Origin: Podarcis cretensis
Lineage: Eukaryota
Direction of reading: 5' to 3'
DNA: 64,000 nt
Assembly: GCA_951804945.1 (NCBI GenBank)
Contig: OX638149.1
Location: forward strand, 90,520,001 to 90,584,000
Shown piece by piece: positions 5,960-57,635 of the stretch (the first letter of the stretch is position 1; every line of letters begins with the position of its first letter). The translations under genes were made by a program, and so were the position numbers. The notes under the pieces are model-generated. The model searched no databases, was not told where the DNA came from, and saw only the letters and a program-made list of their open reading frames with translations.

Positions 5960-6054
5960 CAATGCACGAAGCCTCCAAGAAACTGACAGAGTGTTTGCAA
6001 GAAGTGTATGAGCCAGATTGGCCGGGAAGAGATGATACTAACAAAATATCAGAG
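5960..6054 (+). CDS. BIN1: BIN1 exon 4 (BAR): [32 protein letters not shown]
   Basis: ctccaag|CAATG...TCAGAG|gtgagg, 95 nt. Confidence 0.96.
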
Positions 6055-14701: not shown

Positions 14702-15576
14702 TTTGCATAACTGTACACAGTATTGCAGTGACTGTAGAGAAGAGTATATTGATCGATGCCATATTTCCTTTGGGGAGAAAAGGTGAAACAGATTTGTAGT
14801 GTCACTGTTATGCACCTGCCAAGGTCACCTACCTCCATTAACAAGAGCTCAGGGACTTACACCTCTGTTCCACCATTTCCTGTGCTCACGTCTTGTGAGT
14901 GCGTTTGCATAACTGTACACAGTATTGCAGTGACTGTAGAGAAGAGTACCGTATTTTTCACCCTATAGGACGCACCGTCCCATTAGGCACACCTAGTTTT
15001 TTTGGGGGGGGGAAATAAAGGGAAAAAAATTATTTCCCCCCCAGGCACGGGGCAGGGGCGGGGGAAGCCCGAGCTTCCCCCGACCCCAGCCCCCAAACAG
15101 GCAGCTCTCTGCAAGCTGTGGGAGCCCAGCGCTGGCTCCCGCTGCTTGCGGAGAGGTCTGCAAAGCCTGGACGTGCTGAGCTCAGCGCACGCAGGCTTCA
15201 GCATGCAGGCAACTCTCCGCAAGCAGCGGGAGCCCAGCGCCGGGCTCCCGCTGCTTGCGGAGAGGTGCAGGAAGCCTGGAGAGCGAGAGGGGTCGGTGCG
15301 CACCGACCCCTCTCGCTCTCCAGGCTTCAGCGAAAGCCTGCACTCGCCCCATATGACGCACACACATTTCCCCTTCATTTTTGGAGAGGAAAAAGTGCGT
15401 CCTATAGGGCGAAAAATACGGTATATTGATGCCATTTTTCCTTCGGGGGGAAAAGGTGAATCAGATTTGTAGTGTCACTGTTATGCACCTGCCAAGGTCA
15501 CCCGCCTCCATTAATAAGAGCTCAGGGACTTACACCTCTGTTCCACCATTTCCTGTGCTCACGTCTCGTGAGTGTG
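14702..15576 (+). repeat. About 200-bp tandem duplication; second unit interrupted by the transposon
   Basis: tttgcataactgtacacag...gtgagtg occurs at 14702-14903 and again at 14904-14948 + 15422-15576. Confidence 0.9.
14949..15421. mobile_element. Tc2/pogo-type non-autonomous DNA transposon
   Basis: 27-bp TIR CCGTATTTTTCRCCCTATAGGACGCAC (1 mismatch), TA TSD, GC-rich internal palindromes. Confidence 0.9.
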
Positions 15577-34251: not shown

Positions 34252-37192
34252 ATCTAGGGAACTTGCCAAGGTAGTGCATTAACAGAAAATACACATGGCG
34301 AATGCTGCCATCAGCTGGTGGTTCTTTTTCAATGCATAGTTCAGCTAATCATTGCAGGTTGGTTGTTTCATTTATTATGCTCATACATCAGAGACAGATC
34401 CTAATGGGCATAAAACAGTATTTTTAAACCAGCAGATGGGCACATTAATTTTCCCAGAATATTTTTAAAATGAAATATAAGCATGCAGTAGTAAAGGCAT
34501 TTCAGCAGGAAATCTATAATTCACTAAGAAGCATTCCTGACAAACCCTCTTCCACAGTTCAGTGGTTTATACTTGCAGATAAATGACTAAGTTGGGTGTG
34601 TTGAGGAAGAAGTGACATCTGGAACTTTAATGTGAGTTTTTGAAAGAAGATTTGACAATGTTGACACACTGGAGTTTAGCTAAGCACTAATCAGCTCAGC
34701 AATGAGTTGCTCTTAACCCCACCTCCTCATGCAAACAGCACCAAATATTTTTAAAATGCAATCAGCTTCCTGCTCTATACCTAAGAGTTCTTTTGTGCAT
34801 TATTGTGTAATGAGAGATACAGTATTTTTCTCCTAAAATCAGCATTCTTGTCTGTTGCTAGCTCTCTCGCCTGCCCATGAAATCTTGAGTTGTGCAGGTG
34901 GAAATAAGTTTATATAGAAAGTTATAGGAAGGATCCACCATTAAAACATAAAGCAACATTAGATTTTTTTTTAGAGGCACATAAAAGTAGACGGTGGATG
35001 CGAATAAATGAAAAATACAACCTATTGCCTAACAAAATCAAATTTTAAAAGTTAAAGTGCAAGCCAAAGTACAGACCACAGGGGGGAAGAAATAAGCTAT
35101 GTCCAGATGGTGTGGCAGAATGTAGGGGAAGGTGGAAAATCCACTTCCGTAAAGGGAAACTTCTTGAACTCTAAAGGAACGAGTTGACAGCACTGTCTCA
35201 AAGTTAGATAATCTGCCTGTCACTGCAATAGTGTATGAATAAGAATTGATCACTTGCATGCTGAAGGTGTGTTCTTGTTGGAAATCTAGAATGACTTCAC
35301 TGAACACAGTGCAAAAATATTTTCTTAAGTTCTCCAAATGAATGTAGCAGCATTTGAAGAGGGCATGTGAGGAAACTTAAGCCTATTGGTCTTCTTCTAG
35401 ATGACATGCCCCCTTCTCCAGAACTGTGGAAGACATTGCTCAGCTGCAGCCAAAAGACTGCCCTATTGAGAAGACATGGTTTCCATTTGATTTTTAGATC
35501 CCAGTAGGTGCTGAAAAAGTGCTTGTTAGGTAGTGCGGAGAAAGGCGTAACACTACTTTCCAGAGTTTTAAAAAGCATGAGTAGGGTGTGTGAGAGGGAA
35601 GATTGCAGTGCAGATAAACACCCATGTTGCCTCATGAAATCAGGCAGTGGTCTTTCCCAAGAGTGCTGGGCCCTGGGCATGCCAGTTCTTTCTATACTGA
35701 AAGCCAAAATGTAGGTTGTGTCTGTTGTTGTTAATAATGGATGTGTCCATTTCTAAAAACCCACTAAAAACTTTCTCCCACATCCCCAACCCCCAATTTC
35801 AGAAGCCTAATTTAGATTCCCTTCCACCAGTTATATTTAGTGTGTTGCTATTGTTAAAGCAATTAGGAGCATTACATTAGTCTTGACATTCTGCTGCCAT
35901 TTGCTTGGAGATCTTCTAGTTGATCTGAAATTACCTTCTGCATGTGCTGGAATTTCTGCAGCTTTTGATTATCAGCCAGCTGATAAACATATGTATGAAA
36001 TGGCAGCACCATCTTGTGCATTAAATGTAGGTCTGCAGTTAAAAGAGTTACACCCAGAGATAAGCCACTGTGTTACAAGAAACACTAAAAAGCAAAGTGT
36101 GTGAATCACGTTATTTTTGTGAATCTGTTATTTTTGGCACTTTTGTGACCTGTGAAACTAGCCAGATTGACTGTTGAAGACCCCAGTATGTAGTTTAGCT
36201 TGCTCATGCTTAATTGTCTTCAACAGTTTGGAAAACTAGATCTTTTCTGCTAGGCAGGGGCAGCATGACAAGTGTTTTGCACAATATTTTCACTGGGAAG
36301 CATTTTTTGAATGTTCAAGTAGCACAACACAATTGAAAACCAACCTACTGCTCTGATATTGCACCTAGAAATGAGACGCATTTCAGCTAATTTAGGTTTC
36401 TTAGTATGTTTGGTTGAAAGCATGACACCAAGTGAGCATCTGAGAAAGGAGAAGGAAGAGAAGAAAATCTTGACGTAACCAATCCAGATGGTACGGCCCC
36501 CAAGTGTGGCCTATGATGTTAAAGAAAAATAAGAGCCGCAATGTAACTTGTCGTAGGAGAATATGGATTCCCAGACCAGCATAATTTTTACTCTTGTGAC
36601 ATTTGTGGTTATTTCACAGGAATGCTGTGACTCCAAAAAGAATTGGACCCTGATTTCTTTTGGTTTGTATCTCAGCCATATTTAGGATGCCTTTGTGACG
36701 CTGAACCAAGGTCACTTATAAAGAATGGGTTTAATATATTGGGAAGCCTGTTTTTAGGAATCAGTAAAGCTGGCTTGGGTATCTTCTTTCTCTGTAGGCA
36801 GACAGGTACTGCTGCCACGAGTAATGCTGCTGTCTCTCCTGGCTCCTCAGCGCTCTTTTTTCGTAGTATGTAAACTCCCTCCTTGTCCTCCAGAAGGTTG
36901 CACAGACTCTAATTATGTATGCATGACCTATCTTATGCATATTAATTGTGTTACGCTTCTCCTCTGCAGAAGGGAGACCTGCCCACGACTGAAGTGTAAC
37001 TAATGATGCGAAGCCTTCTTTTGGAAGTGTGTGATTGTTTCTCCTTCCTCCCATGTGTGGACAACCCCCCTAGACCTCCTTCCTCTCTAGTTGTGTGTGT
37101 GTTTTGTATTTAGTTTTTGCTAACCTGGTTCCTGTCTCTGGTTTTTTGGGTGTTGCTGTCTGTGCCGTCGCCATGTGTTCGCTTGCATGCAG

Positions 37193-37321
37193 TTGCGGAA
37201 AGGTCCTCCCGTGCCGCCACCTCCAAAACTCACTCCATCCAAGGAGATGAAGCAGGAGAACATCATCAACCTGTTTGATGACAATTTTGTCCCAGAGATC
37301 AGTGTGACAACCCCCTCACAG
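37193..37321 (+). CDS. BIN1: BIN1 exon 13 (CLAP): [43 protein letters not shown]
   Basis: gcatgcag|TTGCGG...TCACAG|gttagc, 129 nt; carries the class I SH3 ligand and an FxDxF AP-2 motif. Confidence 0.96.
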
Positions 37322-38595
37322 GTTAGCTTCTCCTTCTTCCCTGCCCTCCCTTGTCCCTTCCTCTATCCGCTTCACCTTCACCTAATTTTTTTTTTTTTTT
37401 TGGTCCTTTCCTTATTAGAGGTGTCAGGCCATGAAAACTGCTCAGTGCATGAATGTATGGGGGGCCCAATGTGATTTGAACTGGGCAAAAGGGCCAGTGA
37501 GTTTTCCCACCACATATTATTGGCTCAGAAACTGTGTCTGAGGTAGATGGAGGCAGAATACGTGGAGAGGTTCCATTATTTTCCAATGTCTTTCATCAAG
37601 GCCATGGAGATCAAACCTATTTCTCCCCAGCTAAATAGGAGAGTGAGGCAGGAAGGCATTATTGTTTCAGGACATTGTGTACACACACCCCCATCCCCAC
37701 CCACACACCCTCATGTGAAGTGGTCCCAGTTCTGCAGCCAAGTGGAGGAAATGAGGTTTGGATCAAGGGCATCCATCCCCACCCTTTAGAACAAGCTTTT
37801 CTCCTGAGGCCCACATTCCTTTCTGGGGAGCTTTTTTGGGGGGGGCCTGGGCAAAAGTGGATGGCGCACAGAATCTAGGGTAAAGTTTAGAAGCTCTGCC
37901 CACATAATTTTTCTTAGAGTGAGGAGGAATTGTCTGGATGGGGCCCCCTTCATAACTGGGTGCTAGCATGGTCACCCTGGCTCGTACCTTACATCCCCTC
38001 ACATGGTTGGGGGATTAAGAATTGTGAGATTCTTAAATATATGAATGTGGGCTATGCCTCACAGTGGTAACTTGAAACACCTGTGTGGTTTTAGCTGCCT
38101 CCAAGAAAGAAGTGCTTTCTTTTCTTATTGATAAGAGTCTGAGAGACAGATGGGTTTTGTGTTAGTGACTTTGGATGCTTTCATGCATCAACCCTAGACA
38201 GGTCATTCTTGGCCCTGGGCCTGCCCTTAATATTTTTTAAAGTCACTAGCATCTGCCACCTCTTCAGAGTCTCATGGCCTCTCAAGCTACTATTGTAAAG
38301 CTTGAGAAACTGATTGAAAACAAAGTATTCTATTGTAGCTAATTGCCTGAGGTAGTGACTAGGCAAATGGATGATATCCACCACATTGTCCCTTCCCGGG
38401 GATGATTTAATTCTAGCCCTTGTGATGGAAGAAGGAAGAAACAACAGCCTGACCAGTTTTCTGGCTACATTCTCACAACTTGCATCATCATCATCAACAA
38501 CAACATTGTGATGTATAATTTTTTTCCATTATTCATAAAAAATGACACCTCTAGCAGTTCTGTTTCCTGATTCCGCTCTTCCTTCCCTACCTCAG

Positions 38596-38676
38596 TGCGG
38601 TGGCCTGCGGCTTTTACCTCTTCCTCCTGTTCGACGGCCGAAACATTGCGTGAGGGGCCTGGAGTTGGGAGAAAAG
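38596..38676 (+). CDS. Candidate extra in-frame cassette exon of BIN1 (CGGLRLLPLPPVRRPKHCVRGLELGEK)
   Basis: Long pyrimidine tract + cag acceptor, AAG|gcaagt GC donor, 81 nt phase 0-0, no stop; no transcript evidence. Confidence 0.4.
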
Positions 38677-41664
38677 GCAAGTGTAGGCCACAAGTTACAA
38701 GGGTTGTGGGATTACCTCACAGTTGTGGGGATACAGGTCATAGTTCTACAACAGATTAGGATTCCTTATTGAGGGTGGGGAGCAAAGGAAGATATTAAGA
38801 TGCCACTTAGCTAGCTTTAAACCTGATTTTTTAAAAAAAATAAATTAAAAAAAAGTAGGTCTTTGTCATTACCAGAAACATTTATTGGAATGTTCTGAAA
38901 CAAATTAACACAGAAATGAGCACCAAGTGTGGATTTCTGTCTGGCCATTTAGTAGCAACCATGGGCCAGTTATGGGCCAGTTCTAGCAGAACAGGGTGTG
39001 GAGCTCTTTGGAAATGATGGGAGTTGGAGTCCAAAACATCTGGAGGACTTCTGGTTCCTCACCCCTGCAAGGGTGGAAACAAAAATCAACAGATCACAAT
39101 ATCTCTCCATCAGGACTTGATTTTAATAGGTAAGGGGGATGTTTATGTGTGGAAACCTCTTGAGAGATGACCAAAGGGAAGGTTCAGAAGTAAAGGAACT
39201 ACAAAGGAAAAAAGAGGACCCTGTAGGGGGAATAAAAGGCTTGTAGTACAAAATAAAAGAGGTTGTTGGGAGTAGTGTGTGGGAGCAGTGATTTGTTTAC
39301 ATTTGAGAGAGAGAAGTAAATGAGCCTGTCTAGGATATCTTAGACTAAGGGACTTTTGGAAGAATGCCTGTGGGAAAACACCTGTAGAAAAATGTTATGT
39401 GGAAATGCAAAATCAATGATGAGCACAAGGTAGAATTAGTCTCACCATGAGGTACTGCAAGATTATTGTTTCATGTGGCAGGTTCTGAACAGCATTAGAG
39501 GCTATCCAAATTATTCTTAATTTAGTATAATTTTAATGAGGTGGGAGAATGGAATTTGAAGCAGAAAAATCTTAAATGCGCTGCTAGCCATGCAAAAAGG
39601 ATCTCACCACCTGTTAGTGGCACTTTTCTTTCTTTCTCAAAATCCTGATATGTAGGCGGTGTGGTTTTAAAGAGGTTAATCGTCGGTAACATGCAATAGG
39701 CCGAATTTATAGCTTCAGTGAAACGTACCAACAAGCATTGCCTTTTCTTTTTGATTTTTCTTCCTAAAGACAAGAGCTCAGAGATAGCAGTGGATACCAT
39801 GGGGAGCTAAGAAGGGAGAGCAGAGGCTTTGCATTAATGGGAAAGCAGAGACTAAAAGTGAGAAGAGTTGCACTTTGTAGAGTCTTTTGGTCAAGGGAAC
39901 CAAGGGGCTGCCTTCAGTGTAGGAATTCTGCCTGTATATCCCCCGTTCATTTTGTTATCTGAGAAAGCCGTGGGCCACTGAGCAACCTCCCATCCTTGTC
40001 CACACCTATCTTTTCCTTGTAGCATGCCTCAACAACTCTTACACCATGTTTTATATCATACGTTTCTGTGTAAAAACACTTGCCTAAACAGAGCATTCAG
40101 CTTGGGACGCATCCAGTGTGGAGGACACCTGGCATGTACAGGTTTCAAATGGATGGGTTTGAGTCCTAGATCAGAAACCATAGGGAAAAACCTATGATCA
40201 ATGTATTTCATGTACTATATGTGATTTTTTTCTGTGTGTGTGTTGGGCTAATTATTTGGGAGGAGAGGGATGGCAAACTAACAAGAAAGAGGAACCCTCG
40301 GCACATGGTGCAGGTAACTCTGGGGTGTCAGGTAAGCTTCTAGCATGGCTGTACCCTTTTGACCTGAATTGTTTTTTAGTCAAGCACAGAAAATGAATAC
40401 CTAGAAGGTCTTGCTTCAGTGGTAACCTACATAAGAAATACTTAGGTGATCTGCTGTGAGTATTGTGTAACCTTTTAAAATCTAAATCTATTGGAGTTGA
40501 GATTATGAGGCAGAAAACCGCCTTCATTGAAAGCTTGTTCTGATATTGGTAGGAACTAGTGAATGACACAAAAAAAGTTAAAGTTGAAATATAAACTGCT
40601 GCTGCTTGGAAACTGTGTGGAAAAGAATGTGCTGGAAGTTTCTCTCTTGAAAGTATGTGGATATATCAAACTGATAAAGGGTTTTGCTTGGAAACAGCAG
40701 CAATTTAGTTTTCCTCAGTTGGTGCATTTACGTTAGTTTTCACCAGATATTCTAATAATTCAGAAATGTTTACTGCTGTGCCTTGGTTTGGTTCAGAAAG
40801 GTTATATTGCATTACTTTGCCTTAGGACCAGAAGAACTATCAAAGAAGTTGCTGAAATATCTGGACAGAGCTCCTTTCAGAAACAGCAAGTTGGGAAAAA
40901 AGGGGTGCCTTGTAAATCATCTTTTTAGGAATATGGACATTAGTCAAAATTTGAATGCTGCCACTGATGTTCTAATTTGCAACCCCAATAGAATTGCTTC
41001 TAGTTAATAAGATAACCTCCTGACTAAAAAGGGACCTTTTGGCTAGATATATAACTTGAAATGTATATAATAATAGAGAACTGGAATAATTTATTAATAT
41101 TGGAAATAACGTCCGAATATGGAAAGCATTAGAATATGGGCAGGGGAAACAGATTGCAAAAGCTAAGATCTTAAACAAGGAATCTACTGTGTTTCTGACT
41201 ATGATGATACAGATTTGCTGCTGTGAGGCTCATAGAGAGGCTTCCACTGAAAATGCTTTGCACATCATACATAGTTTCCTTCTTTTAAGAAGTGCCTAAA
41301 GTAGTGGCCTAGCTGTGCTGAAAGTTGCATGTGCAAGTATCTTGGGTAGGATTTAGGGACCCTGTCTGGAAAGATCACAGGTGATGGTGACCTCAAGAAG
41401 ATCCCTGATAAATAAGATGCATGGTAACACGAAAACTGCTCAGGCTCTGTGGAATACTGATGCTTTGTTTTCACGGCTGCGTTTCTGCAAAAGTGTTGAG
41501 CGTATTGTGGCCACTGGACACATGTGAGCATTCATTGCTTGTACCATAGAGTTGTATGCATCTTTTTTTGCACCTTCAGCTCCTGGGTAACATCTTCTGC
41601 ATACCAGCCTGCACCCTATACCTGACTAATACGCAATACTGCTTTTCTTCCTTAATGCTGCAAG

Positions 41665-41775
41665 TTTGATGCCCCTGGGCCCTTCCAGGAGGGAGCCAGC
41701 CTGTTGGATTTTGATTTTGATCCCATTAAACCTGATAACAGCCCTGTAGGGAAGTCGCCTACGCCTGCTGCCCAG
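41665..41775 (+). CDS. BIN1: BIN1 exon 14 (CLAP): [37 protein letters not shown]
   Basis: gctgcaag|TTTGAT...GCCCAG|gttggt, 111 nt; clathrin box LLDFD. Confidence 0.93.
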
Positions 41776-43079: not shown

Positions 43080-43103
43080 TCTTTGCCTTGGGATTTATGG
43101 GAG
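43080..43103 (+). CDS. BIN1: BIN1 exon 15 microexon (clathrin W-box): SLPWDLWE
   Basis: tgcttag|TCTTTGCCTTGGGATTTATGGGAG|gtaaga, 24 nt. Confidence 0.93.
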
Positions 43104-45412
43104 GTAAGATTTCTATTGATATAGCTTTCAGTGCAATAAATTCTACCATGTGGTGCTTGGCATGTGTGAGTACTTCCTTCTGTCATTGTCATGCAAAGAT
43201 GATTATTCTTGTCTTGACCTTCTGTTCTCATCCTCTTCAGTGCTATGAACTAAAGTGGTGTGGTACAGTTGCAACCTCTTCTGCCCTTTGTCTGTCATGC
43301 TGAGAAGAAGTCTCCAGCCCCTGTGCTTTGATATTGCCTATTATTGATGGCATTGACTGAAGCACAAACCTTCTTGCTGCAATAATTGTAGACCTTGCTG
43401 CTACTTTTTACCTTGTCAAACCCCTGCATGCCATTTCCTACCTCTCGATTGTGTAGTATGCATACTTCTCAACTACCACCAAACAATTCCTTATTCTATA
43501 CATATATTTAGTATAATGCTGTGCTTGCTGATTTGCTGCCGTGGTTCACTAATAACATAGATTGGAGATCTCTGCAGTACTGCTGGAGAAATGAACCTTT
43601 CCTTCTTTCTTATTATGCTGCCAGATATTACGCTGTAATAAATCAGTTTAAAAAGCCAATGGCTTGTAGTTTCCAGACTTTCTTCATAACATTTTGGGCA
43701 TGTTGAGATATATAGCTTTGCTTGAGTCCACCTGCTAGCAAGTAACCTTTATTCTTTGCTTTTGTGCATTTCCTGATGTCTTTATTAATTCTATATCTTC
43801 ACAGGAGGATACTTCTTACTTTCTAAGTTAAAATTTAAGTTTACTCATTTGGCTTACTTTATCTGCCATCAGATGTCTTTTGAGGTGTGATTGGCCTTTA
43901 AAAAGAATTGGCCTACACTGGTTTCCCATTGTAAATTCATCAAATTGTCTCAAGAAGTTGACTCCCTTGTCTTTCCTGACCCAAGAACCTTCACTATTAC
44001 TTCTTCCTAAGCATTTTCTCTGCTGTTTTCCCTCCCTTTCCTCCTCATGTAAAGGTTTAGTGAATAGATTGTGTCCTCAGGATAGGTAGCCGTTAGATTT
44101 AGATCAACCACCCCAGAAAAATGGTGCGCTGGGGAAACAAGCACCATATTTATTCAAACAAATGTGTATGAATCTCCCCACCTTCCATTATTTTCCATTA
44201 TTTTCCATTATTTTCCTTCAATGAATATATATATTCATTGAAAATATAAATTATCACACAGCAGGGTTTAACTGCACCAAAACATATAGCAGTCCAGTGA
44301 GTAAAGAATTGCTAGCTCAACCACCAAATTATCTGATTTAAATCTAAACATCATTGAGTACTGTATTACCAAAACTTCAGTGCAAGGGAAGTGCAAGTTG
44401 ACTCATTTCATTCTGTATGAAAGCAACACAGAGAAGCTAGACAGCCCCCCAAATAAAGAAGTATGACAAGTCTCACCTTAGTTAAAATTACTCAACAGAA
44501 GTTCTGGCTGCTGATTCAGTAGCTTGCCACCCTAGTTAAAAAGCTTATGAAGCCCGACAGAAGGCATTGTTGTTCAAAATGTATTGTCAGTAAAGCCAAC
44601 CATTAAAGGCAGGAAGTGAGAAAAAGCATTGTAAGCTACTTGTGTGGGGTACTGTGGCCTGGCACCTTTCTGTGCAGTTGAGAGCAGCCCGATCAGATGA
44701 GAGGTTGCAGTGGACTACCCGTGTAGCTGTGCCTGAGCAACTGTGGTTGTTGAATGGAAAGCCAGTGTGCTGTGGCCTCTCTTGCCCAGTCATAGTGTAT
44801 GTACAACTACTCCAGAAAAATGGTGCAATTTGGAAACAAGCACCATATTTCTTCAAACAAATGTGATCTATATTTTCCTAGCTTTACTTGTGGTATAGGA
44901 TGTTAAATGCCTACCCTAAAGTAGATAGAGATTACGAACCACCAATGTATTGCTTCTCTCTGAACTGCAACCTTTAACCGAAGACATCTTCTGCTGTTAT
45001 TTGCTCTGCTTGCTTTTGTAATATTCTTATGTCATGCTGACGGCGTGCTTCTGTAGTTATTGCTGAAACCATTATTGGCTGAACAATTCATTAATTTCAG
45101 ATTCAAAATATAGACGTTTTTAAGTGGAACGGTTTTCCATGAAAGGTCATGTAATCCATGCTGATATTATCACTGTATGTAGTTTGCTTCTTGTCTATCT
45201 AGCAGTGTTTTGTTGCTAGTTAAGCATTTACCTAAAAACAAATACATTTAGTGGTCGTTCCTTCTTTAAACCCCTGCTCCCACCCTCTGCCAGCAATGGT
45301 TATTCTTTAATATATTTTTTTAAGGACTTAATCACCTTCCCCCCAGGATCCATCCAAAATTATGGCACATTTGACTCTTACCTGTTCAACAGTTCTATTT
45401 ACCCTGGGATTA

Positions 45413-45633
45413 CTGTATTTTTCGCTCTATAAGACGCACCCAACCACAAGACGCACCTAGTCTTTGGAGGAGGAAAACAAGAAAAAAAATTCTGTGCAGT
45501 GAAAGCAGCAATCCTTCTTGCTGTTCTTGCTTCTGTGATAGCTGCACAGCCTGCATTCACTCCGTAAGACGCACACACATTTCCCCTTACTTTTTAGGAG
45601 GGAAAAGTGAGTCTTATAGAGCAAAAAATATGG
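45413..45633. mobile_element. Tc2/pogo-type MITE related to 14949-15421
   Basis: TA|CTGTATTTTTCGCTCTATAAGACGCAC...GTGAGTCTTATAGAGCAAAAAATATGG|TA; the empty site is visible in the paralogous copy near 48995. Confidence 0.88.
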
Positions 45634-45765
45634 TATTTCATTGTCGACTCTGTCTTACTTCTCACTGCACTCTTCTCATTTTTGTATCTTCATGTAACCA
45701 TGCCTACGACTATCTCCTCCCATCTCTGTTTCTCTCTCCTCCCTCCTACAAATTCCACCCATCAG

Positions 45766-45885
45766 CCGGAAAAGACTCCATCTAGCAGCGTTCAATCTAT
45801 GGATCAGTTTCCGGCCGATAATCCTAGCAATAGTGCGTTCGAGGTGGACTGGCCTGACCAGCCCACTGAGACTAAGATCAGCCAA
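45766..45885 (+). CDS. BIN1: BIN1 exon 16, copy A: PEKTPSSSVQSMDQFPADNPSNSAFEVDWPDQPTETKISQ
   Basis: ccatcag|CCGGAA...AGCCAA|gtaagt, 120 nt, phase 0-0; AFEVDWPDQ aligns with human TFAVSWPSQ. Confidence 0.8.
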
Positions 45886-46399
45886 GTAAGTGAAAGTATT
45901 TGAAGTGATCATACATTTGAAATTGTCTTGTTCTGGCTGGTGTGCTCTAGCACAAGCCTGATTCATTTGTTATTCTTTGGAATGCATTAGGCCGGGGCAA
46001 ATTTATGGCCTCTTGCACCCAGCACTCTTCCAAAGGAATTAGAATTTACCCATTCCCTAGGCACAATAGTAAAGCACATCTCCTTAACCGTTTATCTGGA
46101 CTGGGGGGAAACTGATGTGGTCTAGTGACTAAAAGTAATAGCTTGGCACGGAAATTCTAGAATTATTTTATCACTGTTTTTAGGGATTGGTGAGCAGCCG
46201 TGTACCCATAATAGAGATGCATTGCATCCCTTGAGTTTTTGAAGCTGAATGTTCAGAAAACATTGGAGGAGGGTTCTCTGAGTGTTCAACTTAATATTTG
46301 AAGGGTTTGATGCCAGCCCACCTCTGCCCGTTTCCTTCTCTCCCAAGGAAAAGGACTAACTGTGGGGAAGTCCGAATGGGTATCAGGTGGTGAGAGAGT

Positions 46400-47528
46400 G
46401 CTGTAGAGAAACACTCTTTTATTTTCTTTTGGAATATTTACTGCTAAACTGCCTAATAAAAATGCTTCCAGTTTCTTTACAAATGTATGTTTTAGCATTT
46501 TTTTGAGTTCCTCGTAAATCATGTCCCAATTTTTTTTAATTTGGTGACAAGTCTGCCACTTGTGGAAAAAGGTTCCTACGGTTTGTTTACACCTCCAACA
46601 CTTGTTACTATTGTTTTTATTAATTTTAGCTAATTTGGATGGGGTCAGGTACCATCTGTAGGTCATTTTCATAAAGTATTCTTTAATCAGATAGCACACT
46701 ATAAATTTTAAATCTTTTTTTTCATAATTCTTCCCATTTTTCCATTTCAATTGGGTAGCCGAAATGAGCCCACTTCACCATCACTTCCTTTACTTTTCCA
46801 TCTTACAAATAATAATCTATATGTTTTTGATAATGTCTTCCTATTTTTTAATATTAATTCTTTTTCTAGGTCTTACATCTTTGTATGAAATCCATTTGTT
46901 TTTTAATCTAATTTAAAGATTTCATTTAGGTGGTACTATTGTAGCCAGTTCATCCCTGTCTGTTTAAGTTCTTCATATCCTTTAAGTTTTAATTGGTTAT
47001 TTTCTTCTTCTAATATTTCTTTATAGGTGAGCCAATTAATTTCCATGTTTTTCTTTTTCACTGCTATTGCCTCTACTGGAGACAACCATCAAGGGTTTTT
47101 TGGGTTCCAATAGTTTATTTCTCCCCCATACTGTAAAAAGTGATCTCCTTATTATATGGTTAAAGAATCCTCTGTGCATTTTGACTTTGTCATATCCAAG
47201 ATAACCATGCCAGCCGAACCTATTGTCCCGGCCTTCAATGTCTAATATATTGGCATTTTTAGTAGTATCCATTCTTTGAGCCATACTAAGCATGCAGCCT
47301 CTTAATATAATTTAAGGTCTGGCAGTGTGAACCCTCCTCTGTCTTTTACTCCCATTAACAGTTTAAACATAATCCTTGGCTTTTTGCCCTGCCATATAAA
47401 TCTAGCCAGGTCTAGGGGCAACTTCGCCTTCTGTTGCATCCCTTTCTCTTTCGTCTTGCTGCTCGTCTGTCTCAAGATGGCAGCAGCACAAACTACGACC
47501 CGACACTGAGCGTGCTAGTCTGGAAGTC
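46400..47528 (-). mobile_element. L1/Tx1-clade LINE remnant (decayed ORF2 C-terminal part plus probable 5' end)
   Basis: Minus strand LARFIWQGKKPRI...RGGFTLPDLKLY*EAACLVWLKEW and YRWYLTPSKL...CWRCKQTVGTFFHKWQTC (zinc-binding region); stops and frameshifts present. Confidence 0.85.
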
Positions 47529-49126
47529 TTTCTAGCAGTGTTTTGTTGTTAGTTAAGCATTTGCCTTTGTTAAATATTCTCAAAGCCATTGAGAGAGGGT
47601 ATTCTGTAGATCCAGCTCTATGTTTTGCACAACAGCAAAACAAGCTACCTTGGATGGGATTGTGTAACCCACCCACACCAAAAGACAATTCAATGAGACC
47701 TTGATGCGCATGGTGCTGAGGGTGTGTATAGGGAATGAATATTCAAATGCACACCTGCACCAGTTGTTCACACAGATGTTTACTCTACAAGTTGATTTCC
47801 CATGCTATTTCCTCCTGAAGAGAGCCGGGGTTGTGGATTGTGATACATATTGTAACATCAAAGACCCATATACTGGTGGGATGGGAAAGCTATTTTAGAA
47901 TCAAACAGCCTGATATAAATGTAACTGATGCAGATATGGGCTGCCATAAATCAGAGAATCAGCTTTGCATGCAGCAGGTCTCAGTTTTCAATTCCCAGCA
48001 TCTCCAGCTAGAGCAGGAAGAGACTGCTGTCTGAAACCCAGTCAGGGTAGACAATGGTGAGCTAGATGGCTTCCTATATTCTGATATTTCCCCCAGAAGG
48101 TGTTTGATCCAAAGACACAAAGAAGAGATAGGGGTTTTAATATTTATAATACAACTTTTGCAACAAAATAAGCTATACAGTTAGAGTCCAAATAAAAGGA
48201 AATGAATATTTTATGACATAAAATAAATTACCCCAAATGTTATAAAATAAGATAAACCAAAATATCAGATAAGCTTGTTAAGTCCATACTCAAATTCACC
48301 TCACAGTTTCAGGCTTTAATTTAGCTCACTATAGATCATATATCTATATCTATATACAGTATCTACATATCTGTCTGTAGCTTAAAAACAAATACATTTA
48401 GTGGTCTTTCCTTCTTTAAACCCTTGCTCCCACCCTCTGCCAGCAATGGTTATTCCTTTTATATATATTTTTAAAGGACATAATCACTTCCTTCTGTGTT
48501 ATGGAATTAAATCTACTGAGATGCTAAATTCAGTGACAAAATTCAAAATGTGGCCCCATTCCAATCTTCTGCAGCAGAGAAGGTGTCACTGAGACAGCTC
48601 AGCACTGCCTTTATGGATTTGGCAGTGCATAGAAGAAGTGAGGGAGAAAGCAAGAGGTACTTAATGATGTAGGAGGGATTTTTTAGAAATATCCAGGGAT
48701 GCCTTGACAAGGCTAAACCAGGACAGCATCCTCTGAGAACGGTGCTGCCTGATGCTTGACACTGGCAGTCTTCCAGGGCAGTTCTACTTGCACTGCCTGT
48801 ATCCATGGAAGCTCCATCTGCACCCTAACAATCCACTGCATCCCAAGGTGAACTACCCTGGCCAATAAATGGAGGCACTTTTGTCAGACCATTGGCTGCA
48901 GGGGTAATGTTTACCCCACCTTCCCCCCAGGATCCATCCAAAATTATGGCGCATTTGACTCTTACCTGTTCAACAGTTCTATTTACTCTGGGATTATTTC
49001 GTTGTCTACTCTGTCTTACTTCTCACTGCACTCTTCTCATTTTTGTATCTTCATGTAACCATGCCTACGACTATCTCCTCCCATCTCTGTTTCTCTCTCC
49101 TCCCTCCTTCAAATTCCGCCCATCAG

Positions 49127-49246
49127 CCAGAAAAGACTCCATCTAGCAGCGGTCAATATATGGATCAGTTTCCGGCCGATAATCCTAGCAATAGTGCGTT
49201 CGAGGTGGACTGGCCTGACCAGCCCACTGAGACTAAGATCAGCCAA
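49127..49246 (+). CDS. BIN1: BIN1 exon 16, copy B: PEKTPSSSGQYMDQFPADNPSNSAFEVDWPDQPTETKISQ
   Basis: ccatcag|CCAGAA...AGCCAA|gtaagt, 120 nt; 3 substitutions versus copy A. Confidence 0.8.
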
Positions 49247-50099
49247 GTAAGTGAAAGTATTTGAAGTGATCATACATTTGAAATTGTCTTGTTCTGGCTG
49301 GTGTGCTCTAGCACAAGCCTGACTCAGTTGTTATTCTTTGGAATGCATTAGGCCGGGGCAAATTTATGACCTCTTGCACCCAGCACTCTTCCAAAGGAAT
49401 TAGAATTTACCCATTCCCTATGCACGATAGTAAAGCAGGGTATAAATAATAAATAATAAATAATAAATTATTATTATTATTATTAATGAGAAGGGGCAGG
49501 CAGGCAGAGACTACAACCTCCCTTCCATCCAAACAAACAAAGGCTTACCCACTGCCTACCTACCACTCTGATAATTGTCTTTTCTTTGTGTTTTCAATGT
49601 AGGGAAGTTTTTTTAATATTTGATGCTTTGATGTGTTTTAATAGTCTGTTGGGAGCTGCCTAGTCAGATGGGCAGCATATAAATAATAGAATTATTATTA
49701 AGTTCATCAATTCCTAATTTGTTCAAGGGAGATTTTGCTGTTAGAAGTGTCAAATAAAGCAAGGGTTGCTATGTCCTGCTGCATGTGGGATGGGAGTGAG
49801 GGGGAGAATTTTACCTAGGCATTGTTTATCCTGCATTGCTTAGTTTCCCTGTTGTCAGAATGCATACTGGTTCCTTGTGTGTGGCTTTGTTTCAGTGGAG
49901 TGTGGCCCACAATTATTTATACCAAGTGTGGAATATGTGTGTATTCTTTGGTATGATTCTCCTGAAGTCATTGGAATAAGCTGGTGTGCTTTTAGTGAGA
50001 TTTCGTTTTCTGCACACTGACAATAATGTTTTTGCAAAATTGGAGCATTTATCACTTAGCAAGTTTCATTCCTCCCCTACAAGGAAAAAAGACTGCATT

Positions 50100-50535
50100 T
50101 TCTGGGGCTTGGTAGTCTAGAAAAAAGAAAATTAATGGGGAACATTTTGCAAGGTGTGGAGAAGCAGGATAGAGAGTACTGTGTGTACTCCCTCATCATA
50201 CTTGTGAGTACTCCCTCATCATACTTGGGATCACTTGACAATGTTGATGGGCAGAAGCCTTGGGACAGGTGGAGAATTATTAATACAAATTATTATTATT
50301 AAATACTTATTCATACAATACACCATTAATTTGAGAAACCAATCAAGACTAGTCCTTGATTGTTATATGAAACCTCCAGGTTTAAAGATAGGATATCTCT
50401 GAATATTAGCTACTGGGGAGCAACATTGGGAGGGGGCTAGGACCTGAATATACCGGTAGGTTTCCCATATTGGCTAATGGGAAACAGGATGCCTGACATG
50501 ATGGACTACTGGTCAGATCCAGCAAGGGTCTTCAT
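50100..50535 (+). mobile_element. Degenerate CR1-like LINE 3' fragment
   Basis: gggcttggtagtctagaaaaaagaa (LGLxSLEKR motif) and a retroposon-like tail. Confidence 0.5.
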
Positions 50536-53909: not shown

Positions 53910-54011
53910 CCCACAGAAGCCGCTCCTGCTGGTGCTGAGGCAGCTGGCAAAGAAGCAGCAGCAGCTGGAGCTGAAGCAGCTAAAACCGAAACTGACTCAG
54001 GATCTGCCTCA
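53910..54011 (+). CDS. BIN1: BIN1 exon 17 (Ala-rich, Myc-binding region): PTEAAPAGAEAAGKEAAAAGAEAAKTETDSGSAS
   Basis: gttgcag|CCCACA...GCCTCA|gtaaga, 102 nt, phase 0-0; position and composition fit. Confidence 0.85.
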
Positions 54012-55022: not shown

Positions 55023-55133
55023 AGCTCTCTGCCTGCTGTAGTTGTGGAGACCTTCCCAGCCACAGTCAATGGAACAGTTGAAAGTGGAGCCGCTTCTGAA
55101 AGGGCTGACATGCCACCAGGTTTCCTTTTTAAG
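55023..55133 (+). CDS. BIN1: BIN1 exon 18: [37 protein letters not shown]
   Basis: tgcttag|AGCTCT...TTTAAG|gtgagt, 111 nt. Confidence 0.96.
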
Positions 55134-55817: not shown

Positions 55818-55919
55818 GCACAAGCCATGCATGACTATGCAGCCACTGACAGTGATGAGCTACAACTGAAGGCTGGAGATGTTGTCCTGGTGATTCCATT
55901 TGACAACCCAGAGGAGCAG
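55818..55919 (+). CDS. BIN1: BIN1 exon 19 (SH3): [34 protein letters not shown]
   Basis: tttgcag|GCACAA...GAGCAG|gtaagg, 102 nt. Confidence 0.97.
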
Positions 55920-57527: not shown

Positions 57528-57635
57528 GATGAAGGATGGCTGATGGGTGTGAAAGAATCCGATTGGCTTCAGCACAAAGAACTTGACCAATGCCGAGGAG
57601 TTTTCCCAGAGAATTTCACGGAGCGGGTGCAGTGA
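57528..57635 (+). CDS. BIN1: BIN1 exon 20 coding part (SH3): [35 protein letters not shown]
   Basis: ctggcag|GATGAA...CAGTGA, stop TGA at 57633-57635. Confidence 0.97.

What the first reader, a model, noticed from the sequence alone, without database searches (positions are those of the whole stretch)
45766..49246. Tandem duplication of BIN1 CLAP exon 16: two intact, in-frame copies
Seen: two 120-nt exons 3.36 kb apart with identical splice sites (ccatcag / CAA|gtaagt), both open and phase 0-0. They differ at only 3 nt: one synonymous (CCG/CCA), plus V/G and S/Y. Flanks differ at about 4/130 nt upstream and 5/190 nt downstream. Known: mammalian BIN1 has a single exon 16 within the alternatively spliced clathrin/AP-2-binding (CLAP) block. 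Inference: this is a recent lineage-specific exon duplication. It could give isoforms with A, B or A+B (a 40-aa longer BAR-SH3 linker with a doubled FEVDW motif), i.e. a nascent mutually exclusive or additive exon pair.
Basis: partly seen in the sequence, partly recalled or inferred. Interest (0 to 1): 0.85.

Follow-up and report, generated by a model that had tools for sequence, protein, structure and literature searches.

The report
Young duplication of BIN1 exon 16
A lizard BIN1 gene carries two nearly identical, intact copies of one brain-type coding exon 3.4 kb apart; the duplication looks real and young, but nothing yet shows that both copies are used, so it is an ordinary early-stage exon duplication.

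Summary
Two 120-nt, phase 0-0 exons (45766-45885 and 49127-49246, + strand) differ at 3 nt. One change is synonymous; the others are V/G and S/Y. Their splice sites are identical.

The gene is BIN1: SH3 and BAR exons match solved BIN1 structures. The exons lie between the PWDLW exon 15 and exon 17.

The repeat is larger than reported. An ancestral block of about 0.66 kb (A 45193-46076, B 47526-49437) is 97.3% identical around the exon. The copies have since diverged:
- A gained a 221-nt MITE with a TA target duplication; B keeps the empty site.
- B has two extra stretches of 816 and 425 nt.
- A 1.45-kb unique spacer with an L1 ORF2 fragment separates the copies.

The window has no N, the flanks outside the block are not homologous, and divergence is 2.8%. 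These argue against a haplotype artefact.

Exon and intron divergence are equal, so selection is not detectable. The 2.8% divergence is about the neutral distance between sister Lacerta species, so the event is recent.

No mechanism for mutual exclusion is visible. Independent, additive inclusion is the default prediction.

The parts
45193..46076 (+). Duplicated block, copy A (884 nt; about 663 nt without the MITE)
   Evidence: Self-BLAST and alignment; borders shown
47526..49437 (+). Duplicated block, copy B (1912 nt including two B-only stretches)
45766..45885 (+). BIN1 exon 16A: 120 nt, phase 0-0, 40 codons, acceptor cag, donor CAA|gtaagt
49127..49246 (+). BIN1 exon 16B: 120 nt, phase 0-0, 3 nt different from 16A (1 synonymous, V9G, S11Y)
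45413..45633 (.). Copy-A-only MITE: 29-nt terminal inverted repeats and a TA target-site duplication (45411-45412 and 45634-45635). Copy B keeps the empty site with a single TA at 48995-48996
   Evidence: a related fragment lies at 15335-15418
47567..48382 (.). Copy-B-only stretch 1 (816 nt), between homology blocks S0 and S1. It holds a short repeat also seen at 2720-2773
48492..48916 (.). Copy-B-only stretch 2 (425 nt), bounded by a short direct repeat (CACTTCC / CACCTTCC). It is either an insertion in B or a microhomology deletion in A
46077..47525 (.). Unique spacer between the copies, with no counterpart before A or after B
46289..46750 (-). L1 ORF2 C-terminal fragment inside the spacer
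   Evidence: phmmer against PDB L1 ORF2p residues 1097-1162, E 3e-9
49441..49487 (.). AT-rich microsatellite, (AATAAAT)n(ATT)n, directly after the right border of copy B
43080..43103 (+). BIN1 exon 15 (24 nt, SLPWDLWE), the upstream splice partner
53910..54011 (+). BIN1 exon 17 (102 nt, Ala/Glu-rich, phase 0-0), the downstream splice partner

Best explanation
This is a genuine, evolutionarily young duplication inside the BIN1 gene of a lacertid lizard. An intron-exon-intron block of about 0.66 kb, holding CLAP exon 16 with all its splice signals, was copied about 2.3 kb downstream in the same orientation. Since then the copies have drifted apart neutrally. They show 2.8% substitutions, many at CpG sites. 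Copy A gained a MITE, and two larger length changes lie on the B side. Both exons keep identical acceptors, identical strong donors, the same phase (0-0) and the same length. They lie in ordinary long introns (2.7, 3.2 and 4.7 kb). The most likely behaviour (inferred, not shown) is that the splicing machinery treats them as two independent cassette exons under the same regulation as the ancestral exon 16. That would give transcripts with none, either or both copies. Double inclusion would add 40 residues to the linker between the BAR and SH3 domains. Nothing in the sequence enforces mutual exclusion, and nothing yet shows a selected function for the second copy.
For: Gene identity: exons 19 and 20 match BIN1/amphiphysin 2 SH3 structures (E 1e-14 and 1e-18). 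A BAR exon matches the BIN1 BAR structure 2fic at 9e-15, against 1e-7 for amphiphysin. Position: the exons lie between the PWDLW exon at 43080-43103 and exon 17 at 53910-54011. Duplication: 443 nt at 97.3% plus three further collinear blocks. Independent histories: the MITE with TA duplication is in A only and B has the empty site; there are two B-only stretches. Against an artefact: no N in the window, and the flanks outside the block share no homology. Neutrality: 3 of 120 exon differences against 9 of 323 intron differences, Fisher p = 1. Age: JC distance 0.0276 against median Ks 0.021 between Lacerta viridis and L. bilineata (PMC6381762). Splice competence: equal site scores, comparable to the neighbouring BIN1 exons; exons 15 to 19 are all phase 0-0. 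No inverted repeats that could act as competing RNA structures.
Against: No read depth or spanning-read check of the assembly was possible. No related genome or annotated lizard BIN1 protein could be reached. Two of the three exon changes are non-synonymous and the exon is no better conserved than the intron, so one copy may already be drifting towards a pseudoexon. Context differs between the copies: a MITE lies 133 nt upstream of 16A, and there is an A/T difference at -18, in the usual branch-point zone. Either could bias usage. The 164-nt run without differences (exon +33 to intron +76, post hoc p about 0.05) could equally mean gene conversion, which would make the event older than estimated.
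Confidence: 0.5

Rival explanations
1. The duplication is real, but only one copy functions as exon 16. The other is a silent or rarely used pseudoexon that is decaying neutrally.
For: Exon divergence equals intron divergence, and 2 of 3 exon changes are non-synonymous. Context differs between the copies, with a MITE 133 nt upstream of 16A and a -18 A/T difference. Most young duplicates are lost (general knowledge).
Against: Both frames are open. Splice sites are identical from -8 to +76 and score as well as neighbouring BIN1 exons. With only 3 exon differences, the test for selection has almost no power.
Confidence: 0.3
2. This is an assembly artefact: two haplotypes or a mis-join placed in tandem, so the animal has one exon 16.
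For: Not excluded by reads, since depth and spanning molecules could not be checked.
Against: The window has no N or gap. Sequence outside the block is not homologous on either side; a 1.45-kb unique spacer with an L1 fragment lies between the copies. Divergence of 2.8% plus three indels of 221 to 816 nt within about 1 kb is far above allelic differences. It is comparable to the distance between sister lacertid species.
Confidence: 0.08
3. The two exons already form a regulated, mutually exclusive pair, giving two alternative versions of the linker that differ at V/G and S/Y.
For: They are homologous, of equal length and adjacent, which is the starting material of known mutually exclusive exon pairs (PMC9741552, PMC9013439).
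Against: The intron between them is 3241 nt, so there is no steric block. Including both keeps the reading frame, so there is no NMD filter. No inverted repeats suited to docking/selector pairing were found. The two residue differences lie outside the conserved FEVDW-P-x-Q part.
Confidence: 0.07
4. Copy B (or A) was moved by a mobile element, through LINE transduction, retrocopying of pre-mRNA, or capture by a DNA transposon, rather than by replication or recombination error.
For: An AT-rich microsatellite abuts the right border of B. An L1 fragment lies in the spacer.
Against: No target-site duplication, terminal inverted repeat, poly-A or poly-T was found at the borders of either copy. The L1 orientation and position do not fit 3' transduction.
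Confidence: 0.1

Closest known systems
Mammalian BIN1 CLAP exon 16 (alternatively spliced, brain isoforms)
   Same: It has the same gene, the same position after the PWDLW exon and before the Myc-binding-domain exons, and the same role as an in-frame cassette in the BAR-SH3 linker (PMC7389646).
   Different: It is present twice here. The sequence is only loosely similar to the mammalian exon; the shared F-x-V-x-W-P-x-Q core is recalled from memory and was not tested.
Tandem exon duplications giving homologous alternative exons (Martinez-Gomez et al. 2022, PMC9741552; Ivanov and Pervouchine 2022, PMC9013439)
   Same: Two homologous exons of equal length and phase lie next to each other in one gene, a gene with nervous-system-specific splicing.
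   Different: The known functional cases are mostly ancient, diverged and mutually exclusive. This pair is 97.5% identical, lies in a disordered linker, has no visible exclusion mechanism and has no expression evidence.
Small intragenic segmental duplications (neutral structural variants)
   Same: It is a sub-kilobase to kilobase copy within an intron, with neutral divergence and later TE insertions in the copies.
   Different: By chance it contains a complete, symmetric, alternatively spliced coding exon, so the copy can enter the mRNA without breaking the frame.

Membership tests
BIN1 (amphiphysin 2) gene | N-BAR and C-terminal SH3 exons closest to BIN1 rather than AMPH or BIN2 | tested here: met
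   SH3 exons hit 1bb9, 5i22, 1muz and 1mv3. The BAR exon hits 2fic at 9e-15, against amphiphysin at 1e-7 and BIN2 at 3e-4.
BIN1 CLAP exon 16 | Last exon of the CLAP block: directly after the PWDLW micro-exon and before the first Myc-binding-domain exon, in frame | tested here: met
   Exon 15 at 43080-43103, exon 17 at 53910-54011, all phase 0-0. Exon numbering follows PMC7389646.
BIN1 CLAP exon 16 | Sequence homology to exon 16 of other vertebrates | not testable with these tools
   The 40-residue query found nothing in the representative library, the word-indexed library, PDB or the ESM Atlas. Full-length BIN1 proteins were out of reach because of the length filter.
Tandem exon duplication | Two homologous exons, same strand, adjacent in one gene, same length and phase, both with intact splice sites | tested here: met
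Tandem exon duplication | Both copies present in mature mRNA | not testable with these tools
Mutually exclusive exon pair | A mechanism that prevents double inclusion: an intron too short to splice, frame disruption with NMD, or competing RNA structures | tested here: not met
   The intron is 3241 nt. 120 + 120 nt keeps the frame. No suitable inverted repeats lie in 44000-50500.
False (haplotypic) assembly duplication | Copies adjoin a gap, flanks are collinear and homologous, divergence is at allelic level | tested here: not met
   No N in the window. Flanks are unrelated. Divergence is 2.8% plus three large indels. Read depth was not testable.
TE-mediated transduplication or retrocopy | Target-site duplication with terminal repeats or a poly-A tail at the borders of the copy | tested here: inconclusive
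   None was found at either copy. Only an AT-rich microsatellite lies at the right border of B.

The most novel reading that the evidence does not exclude
Both copies are spliced into brain BIN1 mRNA. This lizard lineage would then make neuronal BIN1 isoforms with one or two copies of the exon 16 module, a 40-residue longer BAR-SH3 linker with the conserved FEVDW-P-x-Q segment doubled. It would be an exon duplication caught at the stage before the copies diverge or become mutually exclusive.
Probability: 0.35. Interest if true: 0.45.

Novelty: new member of a known kind. Interest (0 to 1): 0.3.

Why it matters
Most well-studied duplicated alternative exons are hundreds of millions of years old, so the first steps are inferred rather than observed. 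Those steps are how a fresh copy is treated by the splicing machinery and whether double inclusion is tolerated. A 97%-identical pair in a gene with rich, tissue-specific splicing (BIN1, the Alzheimer-risk and centronuclear-myopathy gene) would be a small natural experiment on that step. It also matters for annotating lizard genomes, because gene models may merge, skip or double this exon. Without expression data it remains a neutral-looking structural variant of modest interest.

Tried and rejected
I did not try again. Read laying therefore could not be used, so there is no RNA junction, depth or spanning-read evidence.
2. The search of protein representatives with the 40-residue exon gave 0 hits.
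3. The search for homologous proteins with the stop-free stretch 45607-45900, scoring only the exon part, gave no candidates. Its length filter excludes full-length BIN1.
4. The ESM Atlas gave no usable hit, and PDB gave no hit with the exon.
5. Rfam on 44500-50500 gave only a chance-level hit.
6. Pfam on ORFs of the spacer and inserts gave nothing above threshold. The L1 identity came from the PDB search instead.
7. Searches for target-site duplications, microhomology or terminal repeats at the duplication borders found none. Searches for homology of the spacer to sequence before A or after B also found none. The mechanism of duplication stays open.
8. NAHR between flanking repeats is rejected, because there is no shared repeat before A, between the copies and after B.
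9. A selection test between the copies has no power: 3 exon differences, Fisher p = 1.

Full report
**Observation**

The sequence shows two 120-nt segments at 45766-45885 and 49127-49246 on the + strand.
- They lie inside a 443-nt direct repeat, 45634-46076 against 48995-49437. It has 12 mismatches, no gaps and 97.3% identity.
- Each segment translates to 40 codons without a stop.
- The three exon differences are at positions 3 (synonymous), 26 (V/G) and 32 (S/Y).
- The acceptor and donor are identical, and the donor matches the U1 consensus at 8 of 9 positions in both copies.
- The window has no third copy and no N.

**Gene and exon identity**
- The last two coding exons (55818-55919 and 57528-57632) match solved BIN1/amphiphysin 2 SH3 structures at E 1e-14 and 1e-18.
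- A BAR-domain exon at about 5962-6054 matches the BIN1 BAR structure 2fic at 9e-15. That is much better than amphiphysin (1e-7) or BIN2 (3e-4).
- On the + strand I located these exons:
  - exon 13, with the PPVPPPPK and FxDxF-type segment, in the stop-free piece 37124-37471;
  - exon 14, at about 41665-41775, with an LLDFD clathrin-box-like segment;
  - exon 15, at 43080-43103, encoding SLPWDLWE;
  - the two exon 16 copies;
  - exon 17, at 53910-54011;
  - exon 18, at 55023-55133.
- Exons 15 to 19 are all phase 0-0, so any combination stays in frame.
- The CLAP block is encoded by exons 13-16 and the Myc-binding domain by exons 17-18 (PMC7389646). The duplicated exon is therefore the exon 16 equivalent.
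- Earlier notes of this scan describe the genome as a lacertid lizard. I did not verify the species.

**Extent and history of the duplication**

Homology continues upstream of the 443-nt block in three further collinear pieces:

| Copy A | Copy B | Identity |
|---|---|---|
| 45193-45233 | 47526-47566 | 93% |
| 45233-45340 | 48383-48491 | 93% |
| 45333-45412 | 48917-48996 | 97.5% |

- The ancestral unit was about 0.66 kb.
- Copy A carries a 221-nt element (45413-45633). It has 29-nt terminal inverted repeats and a TA target-site duplication. Copy B has the uninterrupted site with a single TA. This is a Tc1/mariner-type MITE that entered copy A after the duplication.
- Copy B has two extra stretches, of 816 and 425 nt. 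The second is bounded by a 7-8-nt direct repeat, so it is either an insertion in B or a microhomology deletion in A.
- A 1449-nt unique spacer lies between the copies. It contains a minus-strand L1 ORF2 C-terminal fragment (E 3e-9 against human ORF2p).
- Sequence before A, between the copies and after B shares no homology.
- I found no target-site duplication, terminal repeat or poly-A tail at the borders. An AT-rich microsatellite abuts the right border of B. The mechanism is unresolved.

**Real or artefact**

A haplotypic false duplication should have a gap nearby, homologous flanks and allelic-level divergence. None of these is seen.
- The window has no N, and the flanks are unrelated.
- The copies differ by 2.8% plus three indels.
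- Four of the 12 substitutions are CpG/CpA-type changes. That is the usual germ-line pattern, and the derived states are spread over both copies.

I rate a real duplication at close to 0.9. I did not probe further.

**Age and selection**
- The Jukes-Cantor distance is 0.0276.
- The median synonymous distance between the sister species Lacerta viridis and L. bilineata is 0.021 (PMC6381762).
- If gene conversion has not acted, the duplication is only slightly older than a split between sister lacertid species.
- The upstream blocks are somewhat more diverged: 8 of 151 mismatches against 14 of 523, Fisher p = 0.12.
- There is a 164-nt stretch without differences, from exon position 33 to intron +76 (post hoc p about 0.05).
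- These two points leave room for some gene conversion or for constraint on the conserved half of the exon and its donor. Neither is significant.
- Exon divergence (3 of 120) and intron divergence (9 of 323) are the same (p = 1), so selection on either copy is not detectable.

**How it most likely works**
- Shown: both copies have everything an exon needs, and their signals are equal in strength to those of neighbouring BIN1 exons.
- Inferred: both are recognised wherever exon 16 is normally included. They would behave as independent cassettes, giving mRNAs with zero, one or two copies.
- Mutual exclusion has no visible basis. The intron is 3241 nt, double inclusion preserves the frame, and there are no inverted repeats for competing RNA structures.
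- Small context differences could bias the choice: the MITE 133 nt upstream of 16A, and an A/T difference at -18.

**Comparison with what is known**

Tandem exon duplication is a well-described route to alternative exons. The functional human cases are mostly ancient, tissue-specific and mutually exclusive (PMC9741552). Many unannotated duplicated exons also exist (PMC9013439). This case is a young member of that kind. I found no paper describing a BIN1 exon duplication.

**What failed**

Protein searches with the exon gave nothing. Full-length lizard BIN1 proteins were unreachable because of the length filter. Cross-species dating and annotation checks therefore remain open.

**Verdict**
The duplication is real, recent and intact. 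Its use in mRNA and its lineage specificity are untested, and mutual exclusion is unlikely.
- Interest is modest until RNA evidence exists.

Noticed in passing
window 45411-45635, with a related fragment at 15335-15418: A 221-nt MITE with 29-nt terminal inverted repeats and a TA target duplication (Tc1/mariner-like). Its empty site is preserved in the paralogous copy at 48990-49000, so the two give a clean before-and-after pair for this element family.
   Followed up: partly
window 46289-46750 (-), probably extending to about 47300: A decayed L1 ORF2 C-terminal fragment (CWRC..H..C zinc-knuckle region) lies in the spacer between the two exon copies. It matches human L1 ORF2p residues 1097-1162 at E 3e-9.
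   Followed up: partly
window 6007-6054 compared with 45835-45885: The conserved half of exon 16 (FEVDWPDQPTETKISQ) resembles a segment of the BIN1 BAR-domain exon ([16 protein letters not shown]): 7 of 16 identical, tblastn E 0.08 within the window. This is probably chance. If it is not, the linker exon mimics a BAR surface segment.
   Followed up: no
window 49441-49487: A compound AT-rich microsatellite, (AATAAAT)4(ATT)6, starts exactly where the homology of copy B ends. It may be a scar of the duplication or insertion event.
   Followed up: partly
window 55131-55133 and 55818-55829: The exon 18/19 junction reads ..FLFK|AQAMHDY. From my memory of the mammalian sequence, the lizard lacks the valine that follows FK there and has an extra AM.
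   Followed up: no
window 38560-38682: Another first-stage note (s1-835144) proposes an extra cassette exon with a GC-AG intron between exons 13 and 14. I did not examine it.
   Followed up: no
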